From NCBI RefSeq assembly GCF_902713615.1, contig NC_052151.1, positions 168,907,050 through 168,971,049 of the forward strand: 64,000 nucleotides of DNA. The letters run 5' to 3'. This DNA comes from Scyliorhinus canicula. Lineage: Eukaryota. Of the stretch, positions 12,346 through 47,805 are shown in pieces. The notes under the pieces are model-generated. The model did no database searches. It saw only the letters and a program-made list of their open reading frames with translations, and was not told the origin of the DNA. How positions within the stretch are numbered: position 1 is the first letter of the stretch; each line of letters opens with the position of its first letter. The position numbers and the translations under genes were made by a program.

Positions 12346-12516
12346 GAGCTGGATTCTCCATCCCACCGCGCCAGATTTCTGGTTCAGCACGCAGACGGGA
12401 TGCTCCGTTTCGCCGGCTGGTCAATGGGGTTTCCCATTATGTGGCAGCCCCATGCCGTCGGAAAACGCCCGGGTTGTAGGCAAAATGGAGAATCTCGCTA
12501 GTGGAGAATCCAGCCC
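12346..12516. mobile_element. Short Harbinger-type MITE (~170 bp)
   Basis: TIRs GAGCTGGATTCTCC / GGAGAATCCAGCCC; internal GGCTGGTCAATGGGGTTTCCCATT shared with the 19207-19376 copy. Confidence 0.85.
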
Positions 12517-14619: not shown

Positions 14620-15560
14620 ACATGGCACAGTAAAGGGACATTTGAAAAAACCAGTCCATTCTGGTGATAATGCTCCACTTGAGTATCCTCTTCCTTTTCT
14701 CAGCTACATCTGTCAGCAGAACGCTTGTAAGATGTATCTTTAATAAAGACATGGGGGCGGCGGGTTGGGAGTGGTCCACACTGACTAAAATTAAGAACAA
14801 GTTTCATTAATATGCAGGATATGTACACTTCCCGGTACCCCTACTGGGGTTCTGTCTGGTCGGTGCCTTACTGGCCAATCAGAAATATACCGGGTAATTG
14901 GGCGGGGTGGGGGACAGGGACGGGGACGGGGGGAGGGGGGGGGGGGAGAGAAGGGGGAGGTGGGGGGAGAGGAGGGGGGGGGGGGGGGGGGGGGGCGGGG
15001 TGCTTATATTCTGCAAAGAACATGGGATAGACAAGCATTCCCACCCTGTATGTCTTTTGCGGGATATTACAGTAACCCTCTACCCCGATAAGTTACTCTA
15101 CGTTTCGGACAAAAGAATTATGAGAAATATTGAAACAACACCCAAAGCTGAGGTTAAACACAAAGTACCAATACTAAGGTTTGGACAATACAATACTCCC
15201 ATTATATTGCGACCATTAAAAATACAACGATGCAAATCTGTTACAGAGATTCATCGATATGATTATCCAGCCACCAGTTAACCTCCTGCCATTCGTACAT
15301 TTTCGCAGCTGATTAAGCTGCCCTACTTGAACTTTGAATAGCTCTTTTCAATGATTTTTATATCTTTCTTTCTAAGGTGGGAAAGATGTTTCTTTGTCAA
15401 GATCATATCACCCTATCAAAATCCAGCTTAAGCTAGAAATGTCAAATGAAGTCTCTAATTCTTTGTTCAAACTACAATATTAGATAATGCTTTACAATGC
15501 CCACCTGTTTAAACTTCTTTCAGTAATTCCATCCCTCATTGGTGTTAATATGAAGATCTT
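14620..15560 (-). mobile_element. L1/Tx1-like LINE ORF2 fragments with a G-rich tract
   Basis: Degenerate coding-like sequence with LINE ORF2 character; no intact motif. Confidence 0.4.
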
Positions 15561-15610
15561 GATCCGTAAATAGAATAGTACTTTCCTTCCTTGGTCAGAG
15601 GCTGCGTATA

Positions 15611-15638
15611 TACACACACACACACACGCACACAAACA
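15611..15638. repeat. (CA)n microsatellite
   Basis: Direct reading. Confidence 0.9.
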
Positions 15639-15697
15639 TAGAGGCAGGCCAGTTTGTATCACTCCATCACAGTTTTCAGAATAAATAAGTTAGCTAA

Positions 15698-16004
15698 TGT
15701 GGTGATCTCCATATGTATAGCAATGTATATAGTTGGATGTGTGACCTCCAACCAGCAGGTGGGGATGGTGATCCACCATGTAACTCCACAGCTCCACAGA
15801 TTAGGATTTGGTAGTAAATCATATTGGAGGACAGTTGCATGAGATGTAGCTCCAGGAGAATTCACTTATTTATTACCGTCTGTATTAGAGTTCATTAGTT
15901 ATCTTTCCACATGTTCATTTTGTTAATAAACTACCTTACTAATCAAAGAACTATATGTTCTTTACCACGGCCCTATTATATTCTGTGCATAATAGAATAT
16001 AACA
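15698..16004 (+). repeat. 5' LTR
   Basis: TGTGGTGAT...AATATAACA; aligns with 19572-19867 at roughly 85% by eye; contains AATAAA. Confidence 0.95.
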
Positions 16005-16017
16005 TGGCACCAAGAGT
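16005..16017 (+). promoter_or_regulatory. Primer binding site, probably tRNA-Leu(TAA)
   Basis: TGGCACCAAGAGT directly after the LTR; 11/13 match to TGGTACCAGGAGT, the complement of the vertebrate tRNA-Leu(TAA) 3' end as recalled. Confidence 0.7.
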
Positions 16018-16148
16018 ATAAAATAATTGAAAATAACTACAGAGAAGACAGGATGAAACAGACTGAAGAAAGAAAAAGAAAATTCTTCCACCTATCTGGT
16101 AAACTACGGGAAACTGGAACTCCATGCACGGAAAGACTAAAGTTAGAT

Positions 16149-16960
16149 TTGGAAGGGCTGACAACAACTCACCAGCTTCAAGTCACCAGTAATGTAGACG
16201 AGAATTGACGTGTTTTAAGCAGCAATTCAAACTCAGTGTTGTAGCCCTTGGCCTGCAGGCACAGCCTGACAAGAGTCCAATTGCATTGCTGCTCATAGTA
16301 GCAGCTCCTCAGCAATTGAAATTTACAATACATTCGCGTTCGATAGCGAAGGATAAAGCAAAACCTTCGATGAAGTAATAGAATACGTTGATCGACATTG
16401 CTCCCCAAAAAGAAATGAAACATTCCAGCGGTATATCTTTCGCAAGTCTACTCAGAAGGTGGGCAAATCGTTCGATAGTGTTCCAACCGAAGACGCAGTC
16501 GTGCAATTTTAATACATTAAAGATGTTGTGATCCGTGATTGGGATATCGAATGACAAGGTACGCGAGAGGCTTTTGAGGGAAGAAGACCTTCAATTAGAA
16601 AACACTCTGGAGATTTGTCATGTGAGCAAGCTAGCTGCACAGCAGATTAGTACGCTGAACCTGAAACATTTTGGCGCCAATGTACATGAAGACGCCAGCT
16701 TAGTGACGCATTCCAATAAGAAATGTTATCCCAGTGTGGGTGGCCATTTTAAACAGCCGACCAGATCCACCATTTTGTGCGCGTGATGTGGCAATTGACA
16801 TGAGCCACGGCAATGTCCAGCTTTTGGGAAAGAGTGTTCAAAGTGTGGCATAACAAATCATTTTGCGAAGCAACGTTTTTCACATCCAACAATGGACCAA
16901 ACCAGATCAGTCAACATGGTTGATGAGATGTGCATTGAATACCTGTTTTTCGTTGATCTG
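16149..16960 (+). pseudogene. gag: Gypsy gag with two zinc knuckles (stops and frameshifts)
   Basis: FKQQF..IALLL..AIEIYNTF..PKRNETFQRYIF..IGISNDKVRERLLREEDL; CxxC..H..CPAFGKECSKCG..NHFA at ~16777-16880. Confidence 0.9.
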
Positions 16961-17040
16961 ACTTTGACTGAGGACACGATAGGTTTGAATATGCAGTCTT
17001 ACTTACCAGTTGCAGCAATAGTGATGGTGATGCTGACACC

Positions 17041-17346
17041 ATGGAAGACAGATGGATAATACCATTGATGCTGGATGGCATTTTAATTAAATGCAAGCTT
17101 GACATGGGAGCGAGGTCCAACATTCTCAGTTTCATAGATTTGATCAGGCTGAGAGTCAAACCGACAGCCATCAATCAAACAAGTCTGCTGAGAGACTACA
17201 ATGGGATGGAGATTGCAACATTAGGCGCATGTGAGCTCGCAGCATGGGTACACAACAGAAGTCACACCCTATCATTTTCCATTGTGGACGTGGAATGGGA
17301 GTCCATCATAGGAGCTGAAGCATGCCAGGCAATGAACCTAGTTTAG
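17041..17346 (+). pseudogene. Retropepsin aspartic protease (active site D-T-G reads D-M-G)
   Basis: CKLDMGARSNI...LRDYNG..I.TLG...IIGAEACQAMNLV. Confidence 0.9.
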
Positions 17347-17370
17347 CAGCTGTACATTCCAGACAGCGCA

Positions 17371-18276
17371 GTGACAGAGGATCATTGCAAGTGGCAACGA
17401 GATGAAGTGGAACAGTTATCCGATTAGATAAAAGCAAAAGTCAAGGTGGAGGAAGATGAACCAGATGAAGAGATGGAGGAGCCAAAAGCAATTCCAGAAT
17501 TCTGGTTGATAGTCTTAAAAAATGTGGATTTGCTCAATGACATGATACAGGAGAATGCTGAGCCTTTCTTAAAGCATTTACAAGATTTACAGGTGAAATG
17601 TTCAGATCCTGGACAGCCAATGAGTTTTACTCTGGAGGATACATTTGAGCCAAATGAGTATTTTACAAATGAAGCAGTGACAAAAACATACCAGATGGCG
17701 TCACAGTCTGATGAGTCTGATTTTTTTTTCTTGGATGAAGCAGAAATCATTGGATGCACAGGGTGCCAGAACGACTGGAAGAAAGGAAAAAATATCACAT
17801 TGAAAACAATGAAGCAGGAGCATCAGGGCCAGAGCACTGGTAGAACAGTTACAAAAACTGTACCAAATGACTCTTTCTTCAATTTAATTAGTCCTCCTGA
17901 AGTTCCAGAGGATGGGGAACTGGATGAAGGTTCTGCGGCAAGACTCACTGCTGATTTTGAAATTGGTCATTTCATGCAGGAACACATAATTCCACAAGTA
18001 GTGTTGTACTTCACAAGAGAAGCTACAGCAGACGATAATGATGATGATTACGATGGTGATGAAGAAGATTACGATGAGGAAAGTGAAGAATCAGATGATA
18101 AGCCAGAAGAGGAAGACTATGAAAGTTTATTTAGTTTATTTGGCATTAGTGATGAGGTGATAATGAATAGCATCCAATCTGAGCAGAACAACGATGAGTG
18201 TGAAAGTTTGAAGATGGAGTGTGCAGAGGCTGAAAGTGAGATTGCAACAGCAAACAAATTATCTGAGAGCGAATAA
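17371..18276 (+). pseudogene. NAP1L1: Intronless, 5'-truncated NAP1L1 (nucleosome assembly protein 1-like) retrocopy; open from 17428 to 18276
   Basis: IPEFW..KNVDLL.DM.QE..EP.LKHL, GQPMSF, FEPNEYFTN, TKTY, IGCTGCQ.DWKKGKN.TLKT, NDSFFN, ADFEIGHF, IIP..VLYFT and acidic tail are collinear with vertebrate NAP1L1. In-frame TAG at 17425-17427. Confidence 0.93.
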
Positions 18277-18716
18277 ACTGTGAACAGCCAAATGGTGACT
18301 GAAGAAATAATCCCCATTTTGGAGAAAGTGGCTCCAGAGAAGTACGATGAATTATCCACGGAAAGGTTCCTGCAATGGATTCACAAGTATTCAAGGCCAG
18401 TCCAAAAAAAAACTTGCAGCAAGAACATATGAATACATTTTCATGCAGTTCTACAACAACAGATGAATCATTATATCAGATGAGGATGATCCACTAATTT
18501 AGACTCAAACACAAAGTGAAGTATTGAGGACATTGATCTAGCTAAGATACTGGAATGTGAGTGTTTGCAGATCATTCCTGAAGTTGCAAACTTGCCTGCA
18601 ACTGTGGATGCTCCAAGAGTATTCCGACATTAGATGCCTCACCTGTTGTTGGGCACGCAGTACAGCGTTCGTTCACAAGCACCATGGATCAACCAAAATA
18701 CCCCAATCCAGCAAAG

Positions 18717-18893
18717 GCTCCAGAATCAGCTATTGTGGCAGTAGAGTCAGAAACAACTTTCACAGCAGATGATCCAGAGACAGCTATTATTGCAGAAGAT
18801 CCAGACACAGCTATTCCAGTAGATGATCTAGAAGCAGCTGTTGCAGCAAAAGATCCAGAAGCAGCCATTGCAACAAGGGGTCCAGAAACAACT
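18717..18893 (+). repeat. 27-bp coding tandem repeat, about 6.5 units (D-P-E-T/A-A-I-x-A-x)
   Basis: GATCCAGARRCAGCTATT-like units at 27-bp spacing within ORF 18684..18944. Confidence 0.85.
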
Positions 18894-19206
18894 AAACCCT
18901 TGACCGAGACCAATAGCCAGAATGATGCTCTAGGTGCACAGTGAGATGCGAGTGTGAATCGCAAAAATTTCACTGATGATGCCACTAAAGCTAAGAAGAA
19001 AAGGAGAAGGAAAGTGCTGATTATAAAAAAGAGAAGGAAGGATAAGAGAAGAGTTGAGGACACAGTTGCTCGACTGGGTAGCAGACGCGACAGTGAAGAC
19101 ACAAGCATCGGCAATAAGGCCAATATGCAAGAACACACACTGTGTAGGAAGCATCGCTTCAAAAGGCTGAAAGAGATGGTGATTCAAAGACCAGCCAGAA
19201 AACCAG

Positions 19207-19376
19207 GGCTGGATTCTCCGCCCCGCCACACCACATTTCTGGCCCGACCCGCTGGTGGGATTCTCCGTTACGCCGGCTGGTCAATGGGGTTTCCCATTGT
19301 GGGGCAGCCCCACGCCATCAGGAAACCCCCTGGGCGCCGGCAAAACGGAGAATCCTGCCTGCGGAAAATCATGCCC
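19207..19376. mobile_element. Short Harbinger MITE nested in the LTR element, TSD CAG
   Basis: GGCTGGATTCTCC...GGAAAATCATGCCC flanked by CAG at 19204-19206 and 19377-19379. Confidence 0.9.
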
Positions 19377-19559
19377 CAGGTCTTTCGAAAGATGAAACAA
19401 GGTCATGTGTTTGGTTAAGATTTAGGAGATCAACAAGAAGATGCCATTAACCTGAAAGACTGAACATGTAACGAACTGTGTACAAGGGACACGTTTGAAA
19501 TTGTTACGCATGTCATGTTTTGTAATGCACAGTTAGATTTGTTAAACATTCACATTTCC

Positions 19560-19571
19560 AAAGGAAGGGGA
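19560..19571 (+). promoter_or_regulatory. Polypurine tract
   Basis: AAAGGAAGGGGA immediately before the 3' LTR. Confidence 0.85.
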
Positions 19572-19867
19572 TGTGGTGATATGCATCCGCATAGCAATGT
19601 ATATCATTGGATGTTTGACCTCCAACCAGCAGGTGGGGTGTGGTGATCCTTTATGTGACTCCACAGATCAGGAGTTGGTAGTAAGTTATACTAGAGGGCG
19701 GTTTGCATTAGAAGTAGCCCCAGGAGAATTCACTTATTTGTTACTGTCTGTATTAGAGTTTGTTAGTTATCTTTCCACGTGTTCATTTTGTTAATAACTA
19801 TCTTACTAATCAAAGAACTAGATGTTCTGTGCGCACCTTTACCACAGCCACAACACAGAACATAGCA
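19572..19867 (+). repeat. 3' LTR
   Basis: TGTGGTGATATGCAT...AGAACATAGCA followed by TSD GCTAA. Confidence 0.95.
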
Positions 19868-20259
19868 GCTAACAGATATTTTGGCGCTGTTTTATTTGTG
19901 TACTTGAAGCTTCTCCAAAGTTCTAAATTGGCGTAAAAAAAAGCTTTGAAATATATTTGTTCAATGGTTGCAACCCTACTTTGACTTCTGACTCTTTTGC
20001 TAAACATTCTATAGCCTTAAAATGTTGCAGACCAATGACCCTTATTATTTGTGAAGAAATAAAACATCCTTCAGTTGTTAACAGGTTATCTTTCATTCAA
20101 AAAGCCCTTTTGGCCTTCACAATACATGTTGGTCAGATTCAGTCAGTTTCTGTGCTCCAGTACACAGCCAGCGGCATTCTGTATTTCATTTCAAATATTA
20201 ATGCTCCTCCTGCGTTGAATGAGTTCCTCTAATCTCAATCACAAATTTCACTTCAAAGC

Positions 20260-21700
20260 ATGATTAAGTCGGTCAAAGATATTACAGCATCTTCCAGCCT
20301 CTATTCCCTTCTCCCTCATATGCTTGTCTAGTTTCTTGTTAAATGAATCTATAGTGCTCATTTCAGCCACTCCCTCCGGCACTGATTCTCACCACTTGTT
20401 GGCTAAAGAAATTGCTCCTGCATTCTCGGTGACTATCTTATATTGGTGGCCTCTAGTTGTGCTCTTTCACACAAGATGAAGTATTACTGCAGCATCCACT
20501 CTATCAAAACCTTTCATAATTTTAAAGACCCTTATTCGGTCACAGCTGGCTTCTTTCAAGTAAAAGAGACCCAACCTGTCAATCTTTTCCTGATATGTCT
20601 ACTCAAGCATTTACTGTAATCAGCCTCATAAATCTCTGCACCCCCAGTGCCTCTGTACCATTTTTATAATATGGTAACCAGAACTGTAGGAATGGTCAAA
20701 ACAAAGATATATGACCGGTTGATTGTAACTGCTTGGTTTCCTCTTTGCTAATCTGTGGAGCGACTTATTTCTGGTCTGTGGAACTCAAAAATCCCTTTAT
20801 TCCTCTTTACCGACTAGACATGCACCTTCCAAAGTAGTAGTTTTCCCCTGCTGAAATGTACTGCCTCACATTTATGCATGGTTATCTTCATTTACTCATT
20901 CTGCAGATTTATCAATGTCCTCCTGTAATTTATTGCATTCTCTTCATTAACTTGGTGTCATCCACAAATTTTGAAATTGTGTTTTTGATTTTAAATCATG
21001 AATGTAAATTATGATCAGCAATGCTCAAAGCACTTCCCACCTTCCCACTTCCCGACTTCTGGCACTCTGAGTAATTATCTTTATTTCCAACTTTTTCTTC
21101 CTGTCAAGTAGCAATCCATTCAGCCACTTCTAACCTTACTCCATATTTTCAAGCTTATTCGTTAGTCTGTTCTGGGGCACCTTATTCAAGACTTTTGGAA
21201 AATCCAGTACATCTACAAGATTAGCATTCTCTACTCCCCATTACCTCCTTAAAACATTCAATTAGGCTGGTCAGGCAAGATTTTCCCTTCTGAAATTCAT
21301 GCTGACTGTTCATTGTGATTTTGTTTGATTCTAGATGTTCTTTTATTCTTTCCCTTAGTAGGGGTTCCATTATTTCTCTTACCATCAATGTTAAGCTGAC
21401 TGATCTACAATTTCTGTGTTCTGTTTCCCTTCTTAAATATCGGAATTAGATTAACTATCTCACAGTACTCTGGCACAGAACCTTTTTCCAACAATTCTTA
21501 ACTATGAGTTGCATTGTCTTTCCTGCCTCTTGCCTAGATTATTTAAAAATATGTGGATGCAATCTATCCAGATCAGGGGTATCCCCCTTCTGTTTGTTTA
21601 GTTTATTCAATATTTCCTTTTTCATTTAATGTGCATATCCCATTGCCCTCAACTCATCATTCAATGCCATTTCTAACCTCCCTAGTAAAAACTAAAACAG
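20260..21700 (-). mobile_element. Old CR1 LINE fragments
   Basis: Degenerate RT segments on minus (KFVDDTK-like near 20950-20975; DF.K.LNKVP near 21170-21210). Confidence 0.7.
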
Positions 21701-21879
21701 AATAATGGGCTGGATTCCCCGCTGCCCGACACACTCAGACATTCTCTGCCTGAGGCAACAGTTGTCAGGGACCAGTGAGTTTTAAAGCAGTGATCTTTTT
21801 CATTGATTCTGTCTAGGTTGCACTTTAGCTTCCTGGCAGGGGTCTCTGTTATGGGGGATCTCTGTCTGGTGGTGGTGGG

Positions 21880-21911
<32 letters not shown>

Positions 21912-22183
21912 CTGGTGAGGATGCGGTGGGAAGGTAAGTACAGCGTTATCAAAAAACAGCATCGGTACCCGGCATCAATCCTTTGCCGATGCTCTGCTGG
22001 TGGCAGCATCGAGGTTTGTGCCTTGTTCCAAAAGGGTTTTGCACATCGGTCAAATCGACCCATTTGCATCATATGAACCAGATGGGCACCAAATTCTCTC
22101 TGTCTCTGTGATTCACCTGTCCTCTCGATCAGAATTCATGTGGTCGTGGATTGGTGCAGGTAGTTGTCAGAATAGCCCTGGCA

Positions 22184-22439
22184 TGAGGGACCTCATGGTG
22201 GGCCAAGGAAGTAGGTCTTTCAGGTCGGTGCTCTCAAAGTCCAAAGGCTTTATTACGCAGAGTTGTGGAGCCTCCCGCAGCTGCTGCTGAAATGGCTGCA
22301 GCTCGGAGAGCCCACACATTTATACTCCGCCTGCTGGACGGAGCCAGCAGGCAGGGATCTACCCCCGTACCTGTAGTACAAGGGCCTTACCGTAATACCC
22401 TCGTATGCAGTATATAATACAACAGTGGTGATTACCACA
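22184..22439 (-). repeat. 3' LTR of the Gypsy element
   Basis: TG start next to the PPT; TATAAA and AATAAA on minus; left limit approximate. Confidence 0.75.
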
Positions 22440-22519
22440 TTCACCCCCTGTTAAAAAGGAGTCCAGCGGGGGTGGTGGAAACTATTTACATACAGGTTGT
22501 TAAAAACATTTTGAAAGAG

Positions 22520-23590
22520 TCGACAAATTTAGACGGTCGGGCGCCTTGATCCGCCATTGCGAGCGCCGCAGGTGTGGTGTTGATGCTGGCGTTGGTTCGG
22601 TCGTCGGTGACTCCAGGAGCGTCATCTTCATCCACGGGTGGGACCAAGGGGAGGGTAGATCATCCTGGAACGGGGGCTGTGGCGGGGTGCGCCGGGGGAG
22701 GGGGGGGGCTGTGCGGGGACCCGGCTGGTGCCAGGTCCGGGAGGGAGACTGTGTCTTGGTGGCCGTCGCGGTACGTGCGGGTTCGCGTGGCGTAGCTGTA
22801 CCCTCTCAACCAACGGGTCCGCCTTGTGGAGCCACACGCGCTTACAGAGGAGAACGGGTCCTGGAGCTGCCAGCCATGTTGGGAGCGAAACCCCGAAGGT
22901 GGACTTCCTAGGGAAGGCAAAGAGACGTTCATGGGGAGTTTCGTTAGTCGCAGTACACAGGGGCGACCAAATGGAGTGAAGGGTATCGGGGAGGACCTCC
23001 TGCCAGCGGGAGGCCGGGAGATTTCTGGACCATAGGGCCAGCTGGACGCCTTCCAGACCTTCCCATTCTCCCGCTCCACCTGCCCGTTTCCCCGGGGGTT
23101 GTAGCTGGTCGTCCTGCTCGAGGCAATGCCCCTGTTGAATAGGTACTGGCACAGCTCATCGCTCATGAATGAGGATTCCCAGTCGCTGTGGATGTAGGCG
23201 GGGAAACCGAACAGAGCGAAGATGGTGTTAAGGGCTTTGATGACGGTGGCAAACGTCATGTCGGGGCATGGGACGGTGAAGTGGAATCGCGAATACTCGT
23301 CGACCACATTGAGAAAATACGTGTTGTGGTTGGTGGAGGGAAGGGACCCTTTGAAGTCCACGCTGAGGCGTTCAAAGGGGTGGGAGGCCTTCACCAGGCA
23401 TGCATGGTCCGGCCGGTAGAAGTGCGGCTTACACTCTGTGCAGACCTGGCAATCTCTGTTGATAGCCCTGAATTCCTTGATGGAATAGGGCAGATTGTGG
23501 TCCTTTATGAAGTGGTAAAAGCAGGTGACCCCTGGGTGACAGAGATCGTCGTGGAGGGTGTGGAGTCGGTCTACTTGTGCGCTGGCACAT
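22520..23590 (-). pseudogene. Gypsy integrase (HHCC, DDE core, C-terminal LRRSQWRIKAPDRLNL)
   Basis: ORF 22660..23394 PFERLSVDFKG..VVDEYSRF..IHSD..YNPRGNGQVEREN; frameshifted. Confidence 0.92.
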
Positions 23591-23595
23591 GTACC

Positions 23596-24930
23596 TCAGG
23601 ATAGGGCATCAGGGGGTTTGTTAAGCTTCCCGGGGCGATATAAAGTCTCGGAATTGTAGGTGGAGAGCTCAATCCTCCTCCTCAAGATCTTATCATTTTT
23701 GATCTTGCCCCACTGTGTGTTGTTAAACATGAAGGCAACCATCCGTTGGTCAGTGAGGAAAGTGAATCTCCTGCCGGCCAGGAAATGCCTCCAATGTCGC
23801 ACAGTTTCTACGATGGCCTGGGCCTCCTTTTCGGAGGCATGGAGGGTGCGGGAAAAGAATGCCACGGGCCTGCCTGCCTGGTTGAGGGTGGCTGCCAGAG
23901 CGACGTCTGATGCATCGCTCTCGACTTGAAAGGGGAGCGTCACGTCGTCCGTGTGCATCGCGGCCTTGGCGATGTCGGCCTTGATACGGTTGAAGGCCTG
24001 GTGATCCTCGGCCGTCAGTGGAAAAGTGGTGGATTAAATGAGGGGGCGGGCCTTTGGGCGTAGTACAAAAAGAACCCCAGGCATCGTTTTAAGGCCTTGG
24101 GGCAGTGGGGGAGGGGGAGTTCCATGAGGGGTCGCATGCGATCGGGGTTGGGCCCTCGAACTCCGTTCTGGACCACGTAGCCGAGGATGGCTAATCGGTC
24201 TGTGCTGAACACACACTTCTCCTTGTTGTAGGTTAGGTTAAGGAGTTTGGCGGTGTGGAGGAATTTGGAAAGGTTAGCGTTGTGGTCCTGCTGTTGTGGC
24301 CGCAGGTGGTGACGTTGTCCAGGTATGGGAAAGTGGCCCACAGTCAGTACCCGTCAATCATTCGGCCCATCTCCCGTTGGAAGACTGAGACCCTGTTATG
24401 ACGCCGAAGGGAACGCTAAGGAAATAGTAAAGGCGGCCATCTGCTTCAAATGTGGTATACTGGCAGTCTGCCTTGCAAATGGGGAGCTGGTGGAAGGCAG
24501 ATTTCAGGCCCACTGTCGAGAAGACCCGGTACTGTGCAATCTGATTGACCATATCAGATATGTGTGGGAGGGGGTACGCGTCGTGCTGCGTGTACCGATT
24601 GATTGTCTGACTGTAGTCAACGACCATCCTGTTTTTCTCCCCGGTTTTTACCACGACCACTTAGGCTCTCCAGGGGCTGTTGCTGGCCTTGATAATACCT
24701 TCCCGTAGCAGCTGCTGGACTTCAGATCTGATGAAGGTCCTGTCCTGGGCACTGTACCGTCTGCTCCTGGTGGCGATGGGTTTGCAATCTGAGGTGAGGT
24801 TCACAAACAGGGAAGGTGAGTTGACCTTAAGGGTCATGAGGCCGCATACAGTAAGGAGTGGTAGGGGCCCGCCAAATTTCAAGGTTAAGCTCTGGAGGTT
24901 GCACTGGCAGTCCAGGCCGAGTAGCAAGGC
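23596..24930 (-). pseudogene. Gypsy reverse transcriptase and RNase H
   Basis: SPWRA, RMVVDYSQTINR, DAYPLP, LKSAFHQ, PFG, YLDNV; VESDASDVALAATL..RPVAFFSRTL..EKEA..TDQ. Confidence 0.92.
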
Positions 24931-24959
24931 AGTGCAGAGGTTGGGGAGGACATAGAGGC

Positions 24960-25200
24960 GGAAGCCACTGAACTCTACGCCTCAAATGGTGAGGGTGGCA
25001 GTGAAGTACCACTGAGTGGGATCCGGAAGCCAGGGAGATTCTCTGGTTGGTGGGGTGGACCGTGAGGGAGCAGCGCCTTACTGTATCGGGGTGGATGAAG
25101 CTCTTAGAGCTCCCGGAGTCTAGAAGGCAGGAATCCTTGTGCCCGTCGATCTTCACCGTCATCGATGCGGTCGCGAGGTTGTGCAGTCGTGTCAGGTCAA
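24960..25200 (-). pseudogene. Gypsy aspartic protease
   Basis: VKIDGHKDSCLLDSGSSKSFI in ORF 24827..25348. Confidence 0.88.
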
Positions 25201-25279
25201 TCGTAATGAAGGCCAGGCGTGGCTGGTCGGCGGTGGTTGCAGGAGATGAGTGGCTCGATGAGGTGTCTGACGAGCAGGG

Positions 25280-25490
25280 ATCCTGAGGCGGGGAAGATGG
25301 CGGCACCCACAGGCCGCATGTGTCCTGAGGCGGGCAAGATGGCAGCACCCACGGGCCGCATGTGTGAGGCGAGCAAGATAGCGAGTAAGATGGCGGCGCC
25401 CACGGGCCGCACGTGTTGCGAGGGGAGCATAATAGCGGCGCCCACAGGCCGCTCGTGGTCTGCGGGGAGGAAGATGGCGGCGCCTGGGGG
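25280..25490. repeat. GC-rich minisatellite (~42-51 bp units, about 5 copies) in the gag-PR linker
   Basis: Repeated AAGATGGCGGCRCCCACRGGCCGCA. Confidence 0.85.
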
Positions 25491-25492
25491 TT

Positions 25493-26135
25493 TCACATGG
25501 GGGGCGCCGGGGCAACAGCGGTGACCGAGCAGGTCTGGCACACAGCAGCAAAATGTCCTTTCTTACCGCAGGCCTTGCAGAGTGCGCTCCATGCCGGGCA
25601 GTGTTGTCGGGGGTGCTTTGACTGTCTGCAGAAGTGGAACTTGGGTCCCCCAGGGTTGTGTGGTTGCGGCGTGGCGCAGGCCTGGGGTTGGCTGGGGGCG
25701 GTCGCTGATGGGGTGCACTGTAGGGTGTTCACTGGCGGGGTGCACGATGTCCAGGAGGGTTGGGCGGCGCGGACGGGGGCATGCGCTTGAATATTGCACG
25801 AGGCAACTGTGAGCGAGAGCGCTAGTTTCTTGGTTGCCGCGAGGTCGAGGGTAACCCCTTCTAAGAGTCGCTGGCAGATGTAGGCCGACTCTATGCCTGT
25901 AACGAAGGCGTCTCTAAGTAGCAAGTCCGAATGTTCAGAGGCCGAGACGACCTGGCAATCGCAGTCTCTCACTAGGAGTTGCAGGGCACGCCAGAAATCC
26001 TCCACAGACTAACCGGGGAGTTGATGCCGCATGGCGCGGAGGTACCTGGGGTAGACCTTGTTGGTCTGCTGCGTGCAGTTCTTCAGTTTTGCCATGGCCT
26101 CAGCGTATGTCGGCGCATCCGGATGAGGGGGAAGA
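25493..26135 (-). pseudogene. gag: Gypsy gag with zinc knuckles
   Basis: LLRDAFVTGI..ICQRLLE; CPAWSALCKACGKKGHFAAVC. Confidence 0.9.
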
Positions 26136-26164
26136 AGCATTTTCAAGTTTAAGTCCACTGTTAT

Positions 26165-26550
26165 CCAGCTCTGATAAAGAGTCATCCAGACTCAAAACAT
26201 TAGCTTCCGCCTCTCTCCACCGATGCTGTCAGATTTGCTGAGATTGTACAGTACTTTGTAATTTTATCCCACTCTAAGCCATTTCCTGCCATGCAGGAAG
26301 ACTACTCAAGATAGTTAGCCCTGTTCCTGAGACCACCCTCTGCACACCCAATGTGGCCTCAGGACCTTCCACATCACCCATCTTTTCTCTTCCAGTGTCC
26401 TCGAGCTGTCCCTCCGGGAAAAGGGAGATGGGAAAGGGCTGAATTGTGGCTGCGTTTCTCCCTCCACAGATGCTGCCAGGCTTGCTGAGCTTAACGAACA
26501 TTTTCTGCTTTTATTTCAGATTTCCAGCATCTGCAGTATTTTGATTTTAT
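26165..26550 (+). mobile_element. Penelope-like terminal repeat remnants (two pieces)
   Basis: CTGATAAAGAGTCATCCAGACTCAAAAC..CTCTCCACCGATGCTG..TGCTGAG, with a second CTCCACAGATGCTGCCAG..TGCTGAG; a related piece lies on minus at 46612-46715. Confidence 0.55.
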
Positions 26551-27589
26551 TGCTGTCTGCATTTTGTTGGTACCACAGATATGGTATGAAATGTTCTCTT
26601 TGACCAAAATTTTTAGTTTTCTTCATTTTTTAAAAATTTGGCAAAAGGAAGAGGCCTTGTGGCACAGTGGGACCACCCCTAATACTGGACCTGAAGCTCT
26701 GGGTTAGAGTCCAAAGTGAGGATTTGTAGGAGTTGACGGAAGGAGCGTTCGTAACCTGGTTCGAAGGGCTGATCATCAACACGGTCATCCTTCCCTCACT
26801 ATTTCCTACAGGGAAAAGAAAGCGTGGGTGTGAAGATACGCTGATACAAAATTGGTGAAGAATATTGAACACAAAACAAATTCCTCTGTCATGTGTAATT
26901 ACTTATTTCCAGTCAAATCTGTCCATTGTTTTGCAATCATGCAATGTGAGTTCAATCACCTTAATACTGTAAATATATTTAGAATAAAATGCACTTTCTC
27001 AATATAGGTGTATCATGATCTGACCACCCACTATGAGCAGGAGCAGAATACCAATCTCAGTGTAGGATGTATTCATCCCATTGAACACTCGCTGATCTAA
27101 CTGTCTCACCGAGTGCTGGGATCAGGAGAAGGCCCGTATCAGTATATTCCCAAACTAACAGATTTAAATTTGTTCAAATTTATATTTCCAGTGAGTCACA
27201 AAAGATATTTAGATGAACATTGTAACCAATTATTAAAATATATTCAATTTCAAAGCACTGATGGAATCTGGGGATTAAGTGGAAGCGATCCGGCATTGAA
27301 TAAATTATAGGAATGAAAGATCATTGAATAATAATAAAGATTTATTAGGTTTGACATGTTGATACTCATTTGACAGCAACAATATGAAGTGTAACACAGG
27401 GGAAGATTTTATGCTGAGGTTCCCAGCCTGCTGTATTGTTGTTCTCAACAATACGACAGGGAGGATATACTGAGCAAAGTCCCAAATGGTTTCCTGTCTG
27501 TGGTGAGTGAGTCACTGGATCACAGCCACATTGACAGCTTTTTCAAATGACTGAAAGGTCGTGGGGAGTACCTCTTGAGGTGGTGGCAA

Positions 27590-28460
27590 ATTACAGGACT
27601 GTGCTCGCACCTTTTGAGCTGTGAAGAAGGAATTTGCTGACTCTCCTCTTAAATGCAGTCCTTTCTGAAACATGGAGCACTCATAGGTCTCATTCACCTG
27701 TTTCTTCCAGTGTATACCGAACTTTTGAAGCCCCATGCTGTTTTTATTTTTATCCTCATCTGCACTGAACTCAAATGAATTAAAGAGCTCCAATGCTTAC
27801 GGTTCAGCCAAATTTAGTCGGAGTGCTATTTTTCATTGGTCTAATGCATTTTCAAGCGCGGAGGCAGAAATAAAAACTTCAAACTGTTGCTTAAAGAAAG
27901 CCCAGTTCTGACATAGTTTACAGTGTGTCTTGAAATGGTCAGGCTTCTTGAGACCTTCCATTATCAGATCAGTCTTTACCATAGATTTTTCCTGAGTTGT
28001 AGCTTCTGGATTGCTTCTTCAATCTCCAATGCTATTCTTTCCTAATCTAACTGTTGTTTCTTACAAGAAATAGACTACTGGTACCACATTGTGTTCTTTG
28101 TGGTGTTTATTTCAGGATAGTTGGTGTAGTGTTCGCAGAGACAAAAAAAAACTTTAACTTAATCAAAGTTATGATTTTATTTTGCGCTACTAACTTGGAT
28201 TCAACTCCTTAAGAATACACAATTGATCAATAACAGCTATGTACACTCATCTACTATAAATCTCACTACTGCTTTAAACTATGATCTAACTTTACTTGCA
28301 CTATCTGCTCTTCTGAACTTAATTTGCTAACTCCTACATACACAACCTCCCCTGACGTCTAGCACCACTGCCTTATATAGTTGTAACTGTAGCTCCATCT
28401 AGTGGCCACTCTCGACACTACATTAACCCTTGCAATGCTGATAGTTATGATGATACGACA
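27590..28460 (-). mobile_element. Truncated Gypsy element: 5' LTR (28087-28460), PBS (28074-28086), gag N-terminus (27590-27961)
   Basis: Minus strand MEGLKKP..NWAFFKQQF..KIAL..ALELFNSF..NETYE..GES..AQSCN; PBS TGGTACCAGTAGT. Confidence 0.85.
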
Positions 28461-28969
28461 TTATCCTGTCTTGTTCAATTCAAAATTGAATCGTACCTGC
28501 TTTCCACCCAGTATTTTTCATGTCCTGTTCCCTGGCATAATTTCTGGAACTCACACCAAGCAGCTTTCCATTTTGCTGATGTTTGCATTCAAAACCAGGG
28601 AAAATTACTTCATGTTGTTTTCTGCCCAATTTGAGTCCTTCCATCTCATTTGTGCTGTTCTTCTCTTGGCTTGCAAAAGACAACTGTGCCGGGTCCTGGG
28701 GAGAAGGTAGGAGAGAATTTGCAGAGCCAAACATCAACATTGTTAGCAACAGCTTTCGGAGCGTGAGGTCTTGCCCATCACCTTGCCATTTTTCTGCCTA
28801 CCATTTGACACAATGGATTTATATTGAGAATTCTTTTTTAGCTTTTATTTTGTTTCGGGAGAAGAAAAGGAGCTGTCGATGCTTGGCTTGGCACAAAGTG
28901 CTTGCGAAACACAAGGCCTCCTTGCTGAAACAGAGAACGAAAGAAAAGATTGGGTAAATGTTTGATTTG

Positions 28970-29464
28970 AAGCGGTTCATGCCGCTCCATCTGCCAACTC
29001 CGGCGTCAACTGGGCGCTGCGGTATCCGCACATGCGCAGTGGCACCGGTGTCAACACGCACATGCGCAGTGGGACCAGTGCCAACGCGCGCATGCGCAGT
29101 GGCTTCCTTCAACGCGCCAGCCCCAATGCAACATGGCGCAGGACAACAGGGGCCGGCATGGAGGAAAGGAGGCTGCCAGCCAGAGAGGCCGGCTCACCGA
29201 TCGGTGGGCCCAGATTGCGTGTGTCGACGGCACCGGCGGGACTCAGTGTTTTTAACGATGGCAGCTCGGCCCATCCCGGGCTGAGAATCGGCTGGGGGGT
29301 GCGTAGAGCGGCCCTGACTGGCACCGTGCCAGCCGTGCCGGTGCCAATGGCGCCGATTCTCCGCTCTGAAAGTCAGAGATCGGCAAATCGCGTTGGGTCG
29401 ACGTGGCACGATTCGAGCTGATCGCAGGGATTCTACGGCCCAGCCCGGCTGAGAGAATCCCGCC
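28970..29464. mobile_element. GC-rich Harbinger MITE, one end truncated
   Basis: Ends GAGAATCCCGCC; internal CACATGCGCAGTGG repeats; related to 59400-60030. Confidence 0.8.
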
Positions 29465-29511
29465 TGTGGTGCCATCGGAGCTGAAACATGAAAGCAGAGG
29501 AAAGAAACCAG

Positions 29512-30203
29512 GGACGAAATTCTCCGACCCCCAGCAGAGTCGGAGAATCGCCCAGGGCCACCTAAAATCCCGCCCCCAGCATGTCCAGAATTCTCCCACC
29601 CGCAAAAAGTCGGCGTTCCGCCAATCCCGCCGCCCGCCTCGGAGAATGGCGAGGGCCGGTGGGAGGTTATGGGTTTCTATGCTGCCATTATTCACCGGCC
29701 CGCGATGGGCCGAAGTCCCGCCGCTGGGAGTCCTCTCCCGCCGCCGAGGTTTGAACCACCTCTGGTGGCGGCGGAATCGGCGGCGCGAGCGGGCCCCCAG
29801 GGTCCTGGGGGGGTGCAAGAAGATCAGACCCCGGGGGGGTGCCCCCACGGTGGCCAGGCCCGCGATCGGGGCCCACCGATCGGCGGGCGGGCCAGTGCCG
29901 TGGGGGCACTCTTTCTCTTCTGCCGCCGCCACGGCCTCCACCATGGAGGAAGCGGAAGTTGAATCCCCCAGCGCGCATGCACGAACCGGCGAACGCCTTT
30001 AAGCCAGCCCGGGCGGCGGGCGTCAAAGGCCGTTGGTGCCGGTTTTGGCGCCAGTCGGCGTGGTGCCAACCGCTCCGGCGCGGGCCTAGCCCCCAAAGGT
30101 GCGGAGAATTCCGCACCTTTGGGGAGGCCCGACGCCGGAGTGGTTGGCGCCACTCCGCTACGCCGCGACCCCCCGCCCCGCCAGGTAGGGGAGAATCCCG
30201 CCC
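29512..30203. mobile_element. GC-rich Harbinger MITE, complete, TSD CAG
   Basis: TIRs GGACGAAATTCTCC / GGAGAATCCCGCCC; CAG at 29509-29511 and 30204-30206. Confidence 0.9.
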
Positions 30204-31413
30204 CAGACCTCTGGAGAGCTTTGGGATTTAGATTTGGAGGAGCATTTGAGAAAGTGCAATGAAATGGCAAGAAACGTGATGAGTCACTGTTGGAACAGAT
30301 ACAAGAATAGTGATTGATACCACCAGATAAAGGAAAAACAGCTTTGGGTATGTGCTGAGAGAGAATGAGATGCTGAAAGAGGTGTGAGGACAGATGTAAG
30401 CAAGGAAACCAATAGAGAAGAGGAAGAACAGGAAATGTATCTGGTGAATTAAGGAGAGAAGCATAAGACTGGTTTGAAGATGGGAGAATTAAATGAGAAT
30501 TTGCTTCAGCCCAACCAGTGAGTATGATGCACAGTCTCGTATTTGTAAAAGAAGCAGTCACTGATTAATGCAAAATATTTGCAAATTAACTCAGTAATTC
30601 ACATTATCACAGGTACAAATGTGCTCAGCGAGTACAAGAGTTGTTTGTCAGAGCACGTAATTTCATCTCCTTCCCCATTTACAACCTGTAGCAACATGAC
30701 TGGTGCAAATCTATAGAGTCGTAGCAGTAATGATAGTGCAGACTTTGCAGATTGCAACAAGATGTTCCCTTGATCACTGCTGTGATCTAATGATTCATCC
30801 AACAGCATTATTCACAATATGTGAGTCAATACTCGCTTCCCTAGGAACAGCCATGATGCTATTAAATGCAAACAATTAACTTTGCCAGCACCGTTTGAAC
30901 TTGAGTGACAGATTAGTGTGGTTCCCGAGGGACAAAGGCTATCCTCTGCAACCATGGCCCTAGATCCCATGTGTGCTAATATACATGTTCTGAGCACTCA
31001 TCGCTGTCCACATCTGCTAACGAGAAAGCAGTATGTCAGTTTCTGTATTGTGTTTTAGCAGTAGCTAACGGGTCAGAGCTGAGGCAACTCTTGGAAGATC
31101 TTTCCCTCTGAGAACACTGTTTTATATGGGGGAACCACATCTGGGGCAAGTGGATATTTTGCCCCAAATTAAGCCACGTTGTTTGCAACATTTTCGACCA
31201 GGGCCCATTGGCCTTGGTATTAACTACCACAATGGGTGGGAGAGCACAGAGAGTGACACAATAGGTTAAATACAGGGAAACCATTGTGCATGTGACCAGT
31301 GGCCTATTGCCGTGCAGAATATTAGAGCATTCAAATGTCCTGCTGTGGAGAGGCAGGACACTTTGTGAGGGGGGAGGGCAAATAAATATGTTAACATTAT
31401 ACCTGGAGGCCAA

Positions 31414-47587: not shown

Positions 47588-47805
47588 TTTTTCTTTAATT
47601 TAGAGTACCCAATTATTTTTTCCAATTAAGGGGCAATTTAGCATGGCCAATCCACCTATCCTGCACATCTTTTGGGTTGTGGGGGTGAAACCCAGGCAGA
47701 CACGGGGAGAATGTGCAAACTCCTCACGGACAGTGACCCAGGGCTGGGATTCGAACCCGGGTCCTCAGCGCCATAGGCAGCAATGCACTGTGCCACCGTG
47801 CTGCC
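47588..47805 (-). mobile_element. V-SINE short form with A-rich tail and exact 17-bp TSD
   Basis: CTATTGGAGGCATCTAT at 47571-47587 and 47806-47822. Confidence 0.92.

What the first reader, a model, noticed from the sequence alone, without database searches (positions are those of the whole stretch)
15698..19867. Gypsy LTR element that swapped its RT/RNaseH/integrase for a captured histone chaperone (NAP1L1)
Seen: a bounded element (two LTRs, exact GCTAA TSD, PBS, PPT) whose interior reads gag - protease - NAP1L1 - acidic/repeat/basic region - pol tail, with no RT, RH or IN core. Established: NAP1-family proteins are H2A/H2B chaperones, and LTR elements can capture spliced mRNAs by template switching. 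Inference: intact cis signals and no poly(A) or separate TSD around NAP1 suggest the chimera transposed as a unit, possibly as a non-autonomous family carrying chromatin cargo. Such cargo could aid nucleosomal integration, loosen silencing or act as a histone decoy. I do not know of a described NAP1-carrying Gypsy family, but cannot search to confirm.
Basis: partly seen in the sequence, partly recalled or inferred. Interest (0 to 1): 0.93.

Follow-up and report, generated by a model that had tools for sequence, protein, structure and literature searches.

The report
Shark Gypsy retrotransposon carrying NAP1L1 fragment
This is an old, decayed copy of a non-autonomous Gypsy-type jumping gene from a shark whose copying enzymes were replaced by part of the spliced messenger RNA of the host histone-chaperone gene NAP1L1. 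The hybrid then spread to several chromosomes, but the captured piece looks like a passenger that decays freely, not working cargo.

Summary
Window 15698-19867 is a bounded LTR element. It has a 307-bp and a 296-bp LTR (TG...CA, about 83% identical), an exact 5-bp GCTAA target duplication and a polypurine tract. Inside are a decayed gag with two CCHC knuckles, a retropepsin (DTGA now DMGA) and then a NAP1L1 fragment in the same frame.

Relatives of the gag and protease are Ty3/Gypsy polyproteins. None matches anything 3' of 17390, so RT, RNase H and integrase are absent and the "pol tail" is not supported. Part of that stretch is a separate MITE-like repeat.

Window 17374-18122 is collinear with nine consecutive exons of a shark NAP1L1 gene that span 43 kb. 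It has no introns, starts inside an exon, and lacks the last coding exon, the 3' UTR and a poly(A) tail.

Five RefSeq "NAP1L1" models on different large contigs of Scyliorhinus canicula and S. torazame form one clade (100/100) with the window copy. Three also share the non-NAP tail, and one carries the gag. So the chimera amplified as a unit.

The cargo lacks the dimerisation helix and evolves almost neutrally. This is a new example of LTR-mediated retroposition with secondary amplification, which is a known mechanism. No evidence for a cargo function was found.

The parts
15693..15697 (+). 5' target-site duplication GCTAA
   Evidence: Identical to 19868-19872 and directly abuts the TG of the LTR.
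15698..16004 (+). 5' LTR (307 bp, TG...CA, AATAAA at 15925)
   Evidence: Aligns with 19572-19867 over 294 columns at 83% identity with 5 gap events.
16005..16016 (+). Putative primer-binding site TGGCACCAAGAG
   Evidence: Starts with TGG immediately after the LTR. The tRNA was not identified, so this part is only plausible.
16053..17040 (+). Decayed gag (4 frame changes, at least 5 in-frame stops), with two CCHC zinc knuckles at 16778-16876
   Evidence: tblastn hits of P0122 (E 6e-34) and P0121 (E 1e-33) at 16202-17056. Alignment to intact gag P0121. Weak zf-CCHC Pfam hit. Three-frame translation.
17041..17355 (+). Retropepsin-type protease, active site DMGA (17101-17112) instead of DTGA, ending in the LV(K)RV(Y) linker
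   Evidence: tblastn of P0122 residues 294-400, E 7e-20, plus 20 or more other relatives. That region of P0122, P0127 and P0181 is Pfam gag-asp_proteas / Asp_protease_2. Alignment.
17356..17373 (+). 5' junction: 18 nt assignable to neither the protease nor NAP1L1
   Evidence: Protease homology ends at about 17355. NAP1L1 nucleotide homology starts at 17374, which is 33 nt inside host exon A.
17374..18122 (+). Captured NAP1L1 cDNA fragment (host residues about 130-378 of 395). It covers nine consecutive exons without introns, in frame with the protease, with a stop at 17425-17427.
   Evidence: 83% nucleotide identity to the concatenated exons of Mustelus NAP1L1 at L001 19788-62728. Six junctions are seamless: 17421/22, 17550/51, 17622/23, 17762/63, 17902/03 and 17922/23. 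Pfam NAP E 4.8e-59. Matches PDB NAP1L1 chain residues 153-378.
18123..18432 (+). Family-specific coding tail of unknown origin (ESLFSLFGISDEV...AEAESEIA...). The ancestral reading frame probably ended near 18290.
   Evidence: Conserved in P0001, P0002 and P0003, with a trace in P0050. Found only in family copies. No similarity to the Mustelus NAP1L1 locus. No Pfam hit. PDB search gave only a compositional hit.
18612..19207 (+). Unassigned interior: a nearly open frame with one stop at 18942-18944, a 27-bp x 6.5 tandem repeat (18719-18894) and a basic KKKRRRK block (about 18990-19060)
   Evidence: Translation, TRF, repeat family D2. No Pfam or PDB match. No match to Gypsy polyproteins.
19208..19376 (.). 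Separate palindromic MITE-like repeat, nested in or carried by the element
   Evidence: 78% identical to 12348-12516 and self-complementary.
19560..19571 (+). Polypurine tract AAAGGAAGGGGA
   Evidence: Lies directly 5' of the TG of the 3' LTR.
19572..19867 (+). 3' LTR (296 bp)
19868..19872 (+). 3' target-site duplication GCTAA

Best explanation
This is an ancient, dead copy of a non-autonomous Ty3/Gypsy-derived LTR retrotransposon family of catsharks, created by LTR-mediated retroposition.

Inferred origin: during reverse transcription inside a virus-like particle, the reverse transcriptase left the element's RNA just after the protease-coding region. It copied a co-packaged, spliced NAP1L1 mRNA from the middle of one exon to the penultimate coding exon. 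It then switched again, onto sequence of unknown origin, and finished on the element's PPT and 3' LTR.

Inferred product: LTR-gag-PR-(truncated NAP1L1)-tail-...-PPT-LTR, probably one continuous Gag-PR-NAP fusion frame. It kept the cis signals but lost RT, RNase H and integrase, so it could move only with enzymes supplied in trans by an autonomous Gypsy relative.

It did move. It gave a burst of copies on several chromosomes, and this window holds one of them, with its own 5-bp target duplication.

Shown here: the element's structure, its Gypsy affinity, the spliced and doubly truncated cDNA origin, the single origin of the copies and their near-neutral decay.

Inferred only: template switching as the joining mechanism, mobilisation in trans, and the continuous ancestral fusion frame.
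For: - Bounded element with TSD, LTRs and PPT.
- gag and protease are homologous to a family of more than 20,000 gag proteins. Its full-length members have the order gag-PR-RVT_1-RT_RNaseH_2-Integrase_H2C2-rve.
- Those polyproteins do not hit 17400-19900 (best E 0.13). So RT, RNase H and integrase were replaced, not interrupted.
- 17374-18122 is collinear with nine exons spread over 43 kb of the Mustelus asterias NAP1L1 gene. Six junctions are seamless. The match starts 33 nt inside an exon and ends inside exon H. The last coding exon and the first kb of the 3' UTR give no match.
- There is no poly(A) tail at the 3' end of the NAP segment. The only flanking direct repeat is a 7-mer, which is expected by chance.
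- The protease and the NAP segment are in the same reading frame.
- Five RefSeq models lie on five different large contigs of S. canicula and S. torazame. Three share the non-NAP tail, and P0050 carries a trace of it. P0050 also carries the family's gag N-terminus fused to NAP.
- The P0001 gene is a single 882-bp exon.
- All six copies form one clade (100/100) nested inside galeomorph shark NAP1L1. The stem is 0.16 and the terminal branches are star-like at 0.22-0.28. There are 13 shared derived substitutions.
- Decay is near-neutral. 21-29% of residues invariant across vertebrates are replaced in every copy. Codon-position differences are 31/34/60 and pairwise dN/dS against the constrained host gene is 0.31-0.42.
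- The mechanism and its hallmarks are described in PMC5131818.
Against: - I could not retrieve DNA of the other copies. Their LTRs, TSDs and the nucleotide-level 5' junction were therefore not seen. Family membership rests on proteins.
- The autonomous partner of this particular family was not identified. Microsimilarity at the switch points could not be examined.
- The origin of 18123-19207 is unknown.
- The NAP-plus-tail stretch has no frameshift and one stop in about 930 bp. gag-PR has 4 frameshifts and at least 5 stops in about 1290 bp. This is a mild asymmetry that a purely neutral history does not predict strongly.
- Four other copies keep open frames of 213-293 codons. This may be ascertainment by the annotation pipeline.
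Confidence: 0.85

Rival explanations
1. NAP1L1 is an ordinary LINE-made processed pseudogene that landed inside a pre-existing Gypsy copy after its integration.
For: - A 7-bp direct repeat TAGTTTA flanks the segment at 17339 and 18132.
- An A9 run lies at 18404.
Against: - About 1.3 such 7-mers are expected by chance in the flanks searched. That figure is my own calculation from the lengths searched.
- The A9 run is 280 bp beyond the end of NAP1L1 homology. The sequence between does not match the NAP1L1 locus.
- The cDNA lacks its 3' end: no last coding exon, no 3' UTR, no poly(A).
- RT, RNase H and integrase are missing exactly from the junction onward, not displaced downstream.
- The same NAP+tail and gag+NAP combinations recur at five other loci in two species, and all copies form one clade.
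Confidence: 0.03
2. The copies spread by segmental or DNA-level duplication of one chimeric locus, not by retrotransposition.
For: I saw no DNA of the other copies, so I did not observe their LTRs and TSDs.
Against: - The window copy has its own LTR pair, an exact 5-bp TSD and a PPT.
- The copies lie on five different large contigs of 44-426 Mb.
- The phylogeny is star-like with equal terminal branches.
- The P0001 neighbourhood carries a different gene (Vac_ImportDeg) 5 kb downstream.
Confidence: 0.04
3. The captured NAP1L1 fragment is, or was, functional. Either it acted as cargo that helped the element (chromatin tethering or a histone decoy), or some copies are domesticated truncated NAP1L1-like genes of catsharks.
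For: - The fusion to gag-PR is in frame.
- The chimera amplified successfully.
- Open frames of 213-293 codons survive in four annotated copies. All four start at the same derived Met. Three of them, like the window ORF, end within about 15 codons of one another.
- The window's NAP+tail has no frameshift, and all its indels are multiples of three.
- The fragment keeps NAP domain II and the acidic tail.
Against: - The N-terminal 129 residues, including the dimerisation helix, are missing.
- 21-29% of residues invariant from sharks to mammals are replaced in every copy, close to the 27-40% at variable sites.
- The stem of 0.16 and tips of 0.22-0.28 compare with 0-0.04 for the host genes.
- Codon positions 1 and 2 changed as often as the copy's estimated share of position 3.
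- The window copy has stops at 17344 and 17425.
- The triplet indels lie in GAT and AAG repeat tracts, where slippage is expected.
- Annotation pipelines report only the copies that happen to be open.
Confidence: 0.08

Closest known systems
LTR-mediated retroposition chimeras in metazoans (Tan et al. 2016, PMC5131818: Drosophila, mosquito, zebrafish, chicken, mouse)
   Same: - An intronless partial mRNA copy replaces part of the internal ORFs of an LTR retrotransposon.
- Both LTRs are kept.
- There is no poly(A) tail or TSD around the retrocopy.
- The mRNA is truncated at arbitrary points.
- Chimeras can take in more than one foreign segment.
- The chimera can behave as a non-autonomous element and undergo secondary retroposition.
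   Different: - The host is an elasmobranch and the captured gene is NAP1L1.
- The event is old (LTRs about 17% diverged) rather than polymorphic.
- The chimera reached at least six dispersed copies across two species.
- Microsimilarity at the switch points could not be checked here.
Maize Bs1 (LTR retrotransposon carrying fragments of three host genes, 1-5 copies sharing switch points)
   Same: - A transducing LTR element that retains gag-type sequence.
- It lacks RT and IN.
- It carries host exon fragments as a fusion frame.
- It amplified secondarily.
   Different: - Bs1 is a plant element.
- Only one cargo gene is identified here, although the 1.1-kb remainder may hide more.
Acutely transforming retroviruses (v-onc transduction) and HERV-K/FAM8A1
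   Same: - Replication genes are replaced by a spliced host cDNA.
- The cDNA is often an in-frame Gag fusion.
- The product depends on a helper.
   Different: - This is a Ty3/Gypsy element with no env and no infectious cycle.
- The cargo shows no sign of selection.
Autonomous Ty3/Gypsy elements of fishes with the same gag family (for example P0127, P0159, P0181)
   Same: - Homologous gag with two CCHC knuckles.
- Homologous DTGA protease.
- LTR, PPT and 5-bp TSD architecture.
   Different: - RT, RNase H and integrase are entirely absent here.
- The closest relatives are only about 30-35% identical, so the true partner has not been found.
Host NAP1L1 (histone H2A-H2B chaperone)
   Same: - 74% amino-acid identity to shark NAP1L1 over 219 residues (83% nucleotide identity to Mustelus over about 750 nt).
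- Domain II and the acidic C-terminal region are present.
   Different: - No introns.
- Residues 1-129 (including the dimerisation helix) and the C-terminal CKQQ exon are missing.
- Constraint is relaxed.
- The fragment is embedded in a transposon.

Membership tests
Ty3/Gypsy (Metaviridae) LTR retrotransposon | Direct LTRs ending TG...CA and flanked by a short (4-6 bp) target-site duplication | tested here: met
   LTRs of 307 and 296 bp, 83% identical, with an exact 5-bp GCTAA TSD.
Ty3/Gypsy (Metaviridae) LTR retrotransposon | gag and protease homologous to those of elements whose pol order is PR-RT-RH-IN | tested here: met
   gag E 6e-34 and PR E 7e-20 to P0122. The full-length relatives P0127, P0159 and P0181 carry gag-asp_proteas, RVT_1, RT_RNaseH_2, Integrase_H2C2 and rve in that order.
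Ty3/Gypsy (Metaviridae) LTR retrotransposon | Own reverse transcriptase, RNase H and integrase | tested here: not met
   No hit better than E 0.13 from 150 relatives anywhere in 17400-19900. No Pfam domain there. The element is therefore a non-autonomous derivative, not an autonomous member.
Ty3/Gypsy (Metaviridae) LTR retrotransposon | PBS complementary to a tRNA 3' end, and a PPT next to the 3' LTR | tested here: inconclusive
   The PPT AAAGGAAGGGGA is present at 19560-19571. A TGG-initiated stretch lies at 16005, but no tRNA was matched.
LTR-mediated retroposition chimera / transducing non-autonomous LTR element | The internal foreign segment is an intronless copy of a spliced host mRNA | tested here: met
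   Nine consecutive exons of Mustelus NAP1L1 (L001 19755-62741) are collinear with 17374-18122. Six junctions are seamless.
LTR-mediated retroposition chimera / transducing non-autonomous LTR element | The retrocopy replaces internal element sequence rather than interrupting it, and both LTRs are retained | tested here: met
   Everything after the protease linker is missing, and there is no pol remnant downstream. Both LTRs are present.
LTR-mediated retroposition chimera / transducing non-autonomous LTR element | Partial mRNA with no poly(A) tail and no TSD of its own | tested here: met
   The segment starts 33 nt inside exon A and ends inside exon H. The last exon and the 3' UTR are absent. 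The only flanking repeat is a chance-level 7-mer and there is no adjacent A-run.
LTR-mediated retroposition chimera / transducing non-autonomous LTR element | Microsimilarity between element and mRNA at the switch points | not testable with these tools
   The sequence of the parental autonomous element is not available. 18 unassigned nt lie at the 5' junction (17356-17373).
LTR-mediated retroposition chimera / transducing non-autonomous LTR element | Secondary retroposition: several dispersed copies sharing the same junctions | tested here: met
   This is protein-level evidence only. P0001, P0002 and P0003 share the NAP-tail junction, and P0050 joins the family gag to NAP. The copies lie on five different contigs in two species and form a monophyletic clade (100/100). 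The LTRs and TSDs of those copies were not seen.
Functional NAP1-family histone chaperone | Complete NAP fold including the long dimerisation helix (domain I) | tested here: not met
   Only Pfam model positions 70-266 of 266 are matched. The ORF from 17446 aligns to residues 153-378 of human NAP1L1 and 172-397 of yeast NAP1. The full fragment from 17374 starts at host residue 130.
Functional NAP1-family histone chaperone | Purifying selection and an intact reading frame | tested here: not met
   Stops at 17344 and 17425. 26% of vertebrate-invariant residues are replaced in the window copy and 21-29% in the others. Codon-position differences are 31/34/60. Branch lengths are 10-50 times those of host genes.
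LINE-mediated processed pseudogene | Complete 3' end with a poly(A) tail, flanked by a 7-20 bp TSD | tested here: not met

The most novel reading that the evidence does not exclude
The in-frame Gag-PR-NAP1L1(domain II plus acidic tail) fusion was not a mere passenger. For a time it may have helped this non-autonomous family to be packaged, to reach chromatin or to evade silencing, for example by binding H2A-H2B or competing with host NAP1L1. That could explain why this chimera, unlike most, amplified into a dispersed family. Alternatively, a few copies that still keep open frames of 275-293 codons from a shared derived Met are expressed as truncated NAP1L1-like proteins in catsharks.
Probability: 0.07. 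Interest if true: 0.75.

Novelty: new member of a known kind. Interest (0 to 1): 0.4.

Why it matters
- It is a clean vertebrate example of a retrovirus-oncogene-style transduction by a Ty3/Gypsy element. A spliced host mRNA fragment replaced RT, RNase H and integrase, and the chimera then amplified into a dispersed family. It extends LTR-mediated retroposition with secondary amplification to elasmobranchs.
- It has a practical consequence. At least five RefSeq models in Scyliorhinus canicula and S. torazame that are named "nucleosome assembly protein 1-like 1" or "uncharacterized protein" are transposon-borne truncated retrocopies, not NAP1L1 paralogues. They would inflate gene-family counts.
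- It does not currently support a new biological function for the cargo.

Tried and rejected
- Fetching the DNA around the catshark copies P0001, P0050 and P0003 failed because the assembly files were too large. LTRs and TSDs of other copies could not be checked.
- Pfam gave no hit for the window's own protease piece or for any piece 3' of NAP. Protease identity was established through relatives instead.
- Search for the source of the tail: a word-indexed protein search restricted to the tail found only family copies. blastn and nhmmer against the whole Mustelus NAP1L1 locus, including introns and 1 kb downstream, found nothing. PDB sequence searches found nothing, except a match to staphylococcal protein A in which no single stretch passed the threshold. 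I regard that match as compositional.
- A possible read-through into the intron after exon H (15 of 20 nt by eye) was not supported statistically.
- The gag region of P0050 found only one relative in the length-limited search. The unrestricted search was needed.
- The second Gypsy-type element in the window is not the partner: no nucleotide or tblastx similarity.
- Rfam found nothing in 15000-20500.
- The single tRNA call in the window is a SINE-like repeat and does not explain the PBS.
- Literature searches found no description of a NAP1L1-carrying LTR element or of NAP1L1 expansion in Scyliorhinus.
- I did not scan metagenome or prokaryote collections, since they cannot contain the relevant genomes.

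Full report

Yes, for the most part. The sequence at 15698-19867 is a bounded LTR element.

- The two LTRs, 15698-16004 and 19572-19867, begin with TG and end with CA. They align over 294 columns with 50 substitutions and 5 gap events, giving p = 0.17 and K2P = 0.195.
- They are flanked by an exact GCTAA duplication at 15693-15697 and 19868-19872.
- A polypurine tract, AAAGGAAGGGGA, abuts the 3' LTR.
- The 5' LTR carries AATAAA at 15925.
- A TGG-initiated stretch follows the 5' LTR, but I could not assign it to a tRNA. The PBS is therefore only plausible.

**2. What is inside?**

Three-frame translation and tblastn with 150 relatives show a decayed gag at 16053-17040. It has 4 frame changes and at least 5 in-frame stops. 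It carries two CCHC knuckles that read LCA*CGN*HEPRQC and CSKCGITNHFAKQR at 16778-16876.

A protease follows at 17041-17355. Its best match is P0122 residues 294-400, E 7e-20. That region of the relatives is Pfam gag-asp_proteas / Asp_protease_2. In the alignment the catalytic DTGA reads DMGA in the window, and the conserved LG..C..L.LVKRV end of the protease is present as IGAEACQAMNLV*QLY.

The gag belongs to a huge family, with 20,842 hits at E <= 0.001. Its full-length members (P0127, P0159, P0181) have the order gag, aspartic protease, RVT_1, RT_RNaseH_2, Integrase_H2C2, rve. That is the Ty3/Gypsy order.

None of those polyproteins gives any hit better than E 0.13 between 17400 and 19900 on either strand. 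Part of the supposed tail, 19208-19376, is a self-complementary MITE-like repeat that also occurs at 12348-12516.

**3. The NAP segment**

The ORF at 17446-18273 hits Pfam NAP at E 4.8e-59, but only model positions 70-266 of 266. It aligns to residues 153-378 of human NAP1L1 and 172-397 of yeast NAP1 in solved structures.

I obtained the genomic locus of NAP1L1 from Mustelus asterias, another carcharhiniform shark. This is L001, where the gene spans about 89.8 kb.

- Window 17374-18122 is collinear with nine consecutive exons that lie between L001 19755 and 62741. Nucleotide identity is 83%.
- The exon-exon junctions at 17421/22, 17550/51, 17622/23, 17762/63, 17902/03 and 17922/23 are seamless. 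One of them flanks a 20-nt micro-exon.
- The last two junctions lie in the acidic GAT/GAA tract, where small in-frame indels blur the alignment.
- The match starts 33 nt inside exon A (host residue 130 of 395) and ends inside exon H (about residue 378).
- The last coding exon (CKQQ), the 3' UTR and every intron give no match to the rest of the element.
- There is no adjacent A-run. The only direct repeat flanking the segment is a 7-mer, which is expected by chance.

This is therefore a 5'- and 3'-truncated copy of a spliced mRNA. It replaced the element's sequence from just after the protease, and it is in the same reading frame as the protease. These are the hallmarks of template-switch, LTR-mediated retroposition as described by Tan et al. 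2016 (PMC5131818). They are not those of a LINE-made processed pseudogene.

**4. Is it a family?**

A protein search with the NAP+tail ORF returned three proteins at the top that cover 87-98% of the query, including the non-NAP tail:

- P0001, XP_038676838.1, S. canicula
- P0002, XP_072347442.1, S. torazame
- P0003, XP_072353948.1, S. torazame

True NAP1L1 orthologues cover only 64% of the query. The alignment shows the shared tail ...EEEDYE.LFS.FG.SD.V....QS.Q.ND.CES.KM.CAEAESEIA....

P0050 (XP_072357097.1, S. torazame) joins the family's gag N-terminus to the NAP segment, and it carries a trace of the tail. P0102 (XP_038646186.1, S. canicula) is a fifth copy.

The five lie on five different large contigs. 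The P0001 gene is a single 882-bp exon.

In a maximum-likelihood tree the six copies form one clade (100/100) nested inside galeomorph shark NAP1L1. The stem is 0.16 and the terminal branches are nearly equal at 0.22-0.28. Host genes have branches of 0-0.04. Thirteen substitutions are shared by all or all but one of the copies.

The simplest history is one capture, a period of evolution as an element, then a burst of retrotransposition followed by long decay. I could not fetch the DNA of the other copies, so their LTRs and TSDs remain to be seen.

**5. Does the cargo do anything?**

The evidence points to a passenger.

- The fragment lacks residues 1-129. From the published NAP1 structure, this region contains the long dimerisation helix.
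- Every copy has replaced 21-29% of the residues that are invariant in 20 vertebrate NAP1L1 proteins. That is almost as high as at variable positions, 27-40%.
- Against the Mustelus coding sequence, the window copy differs at 31, 34 and 60 first, second and third codon positions, with pairwise dN/dS of 0.31-0.42. This is roughly what a neutral copy lineage compared with a strongly constrained host lineage should give.
- About 13% nucleotide change on the copy lineage fits about 8-9% since insertion (half the LTR divergence) plus the stem.

A caveat remains. NAP+tail has no frameshift and a single internal stop (17425-17427) in about 930 bp, while gag-PR is much more broken. Four other copies also keep open frames from a shared derived Met. 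Triplet-repeat slippage and annotation ascertainment can explain this, but I cannot exclude a past or residual function. I give that reading 7-8%.

**6. What remains unexplained**

The stretch 18123-19207 has no detectable relative outside the family. It contains the conserved tail, a nearly open frame with a 27-bp x 6.5 tandem repeat, and a basic block. It may be a second captured transcript, which is known to occur in such chimeras (PMC5131818), or sequence from the unknown parent element.

**7. Comparison and novelty**

The mechanism and the class are known: a transducing, non-autonomous LTR element that arose by LTR-mediated retroposition and then underwent secondary retroposition. Examples are maize Bs1, the Drosophila, zebrafish, chicken and mouse cases, and HERV-K/FAM8A1.

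I found no description of a NAP1L1-carrying LTR element or of these catshark loci in the searchable literature. I file it as a new member of a known kind. It is of moderate interest as an old, amplified vertebrate example and as a source of mis-annotated "NAP1L1" genes.

**Verdict**

Everything holds except the pol tail, and the PBS is uncertain.
Capture and family are supported. Functional cargo is not.
- Confidence in the best explanation is 0.85.
- Interest is 0.4.

Noticed in passing
window 22987-27964 (minus strand): A second, degenerate Ty3/Gypsy-type element. It has gag at 27961-27590 and 26119-25514, RT at about 24804-24385, and RNase H / integrase at about 24066-23071. No LTR pair of 60 bp or more was found in 20500-30500. 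It shows no nucleotide or tblastx similarity to the NAP-carrying element, so it is not its partner.
   Followed up: partly
window 19208-19376 and 12348-12516: A palindromic, GC-rich MITE-like repeat with terminal GGCTGGATTCTCC...GGAGAATCC. Two copies are 78% identical, and one lies inside the element. I did not determine whether it is a later insertion or part of the family.
   Followed up: partly
window 18612-19418: One reading frame is open for about 270 codons with a single stop at 18942-18944, although the element is otherwise decayed. It encodes 9-residue acidic repeats (DPE.AI...) from a 27-bp x 6.5 tandem array, followed by a KKKRRRK-rich block. No homologue was found, so it may be a second captured transcript.
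   Followed up: partly
proteins P0001, P0002, P0003, P0050, P0102 (XP_038676838.1, XP_072347442.1, XP_072353948.1, XP_072357097.1, XP_038646186.1): RefSeq models of Scyliorhinus canicula and S. torazame that are named NAP1L1, NAP1L1-A or uncharacterized protein are truncated, transposon-borne retrocopies of this family. P0003 is modelled as a 48-kb multi-exon gene and P0050 as gag spliced to NAP. Both are probably annotation artefacts.
   Followed up: partly
window 47735-47810 (minus strand): ARAGORN calls a tRNA-His with anticodon atg. The sequence (GGCAGCACGGTGGCACAGTG...GGGTTCGAATCCC...) looks like a tRNA-derived SINE rather than a tRNA gene.
   Followed up: no
window 14889-14999 and 15612-15638: A G-rich low-complexity tract (runs of G with GGGGA/GGGAC units) and an (AC)13 microsatellite lie just upstream of the insertion site.
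   Followed up: no
L001 54617-54636 (Mustelus asterias NAP1L1): The host gene has a 20-nt micro-exon (VPENGEL) and a 33-nt exon. Both are represented in the captured fragment, which confirms that the fragment came from fully spliced mRNA. An alternative end (DYDPKV) reads into the intron after exon H.
   Followed up: yes
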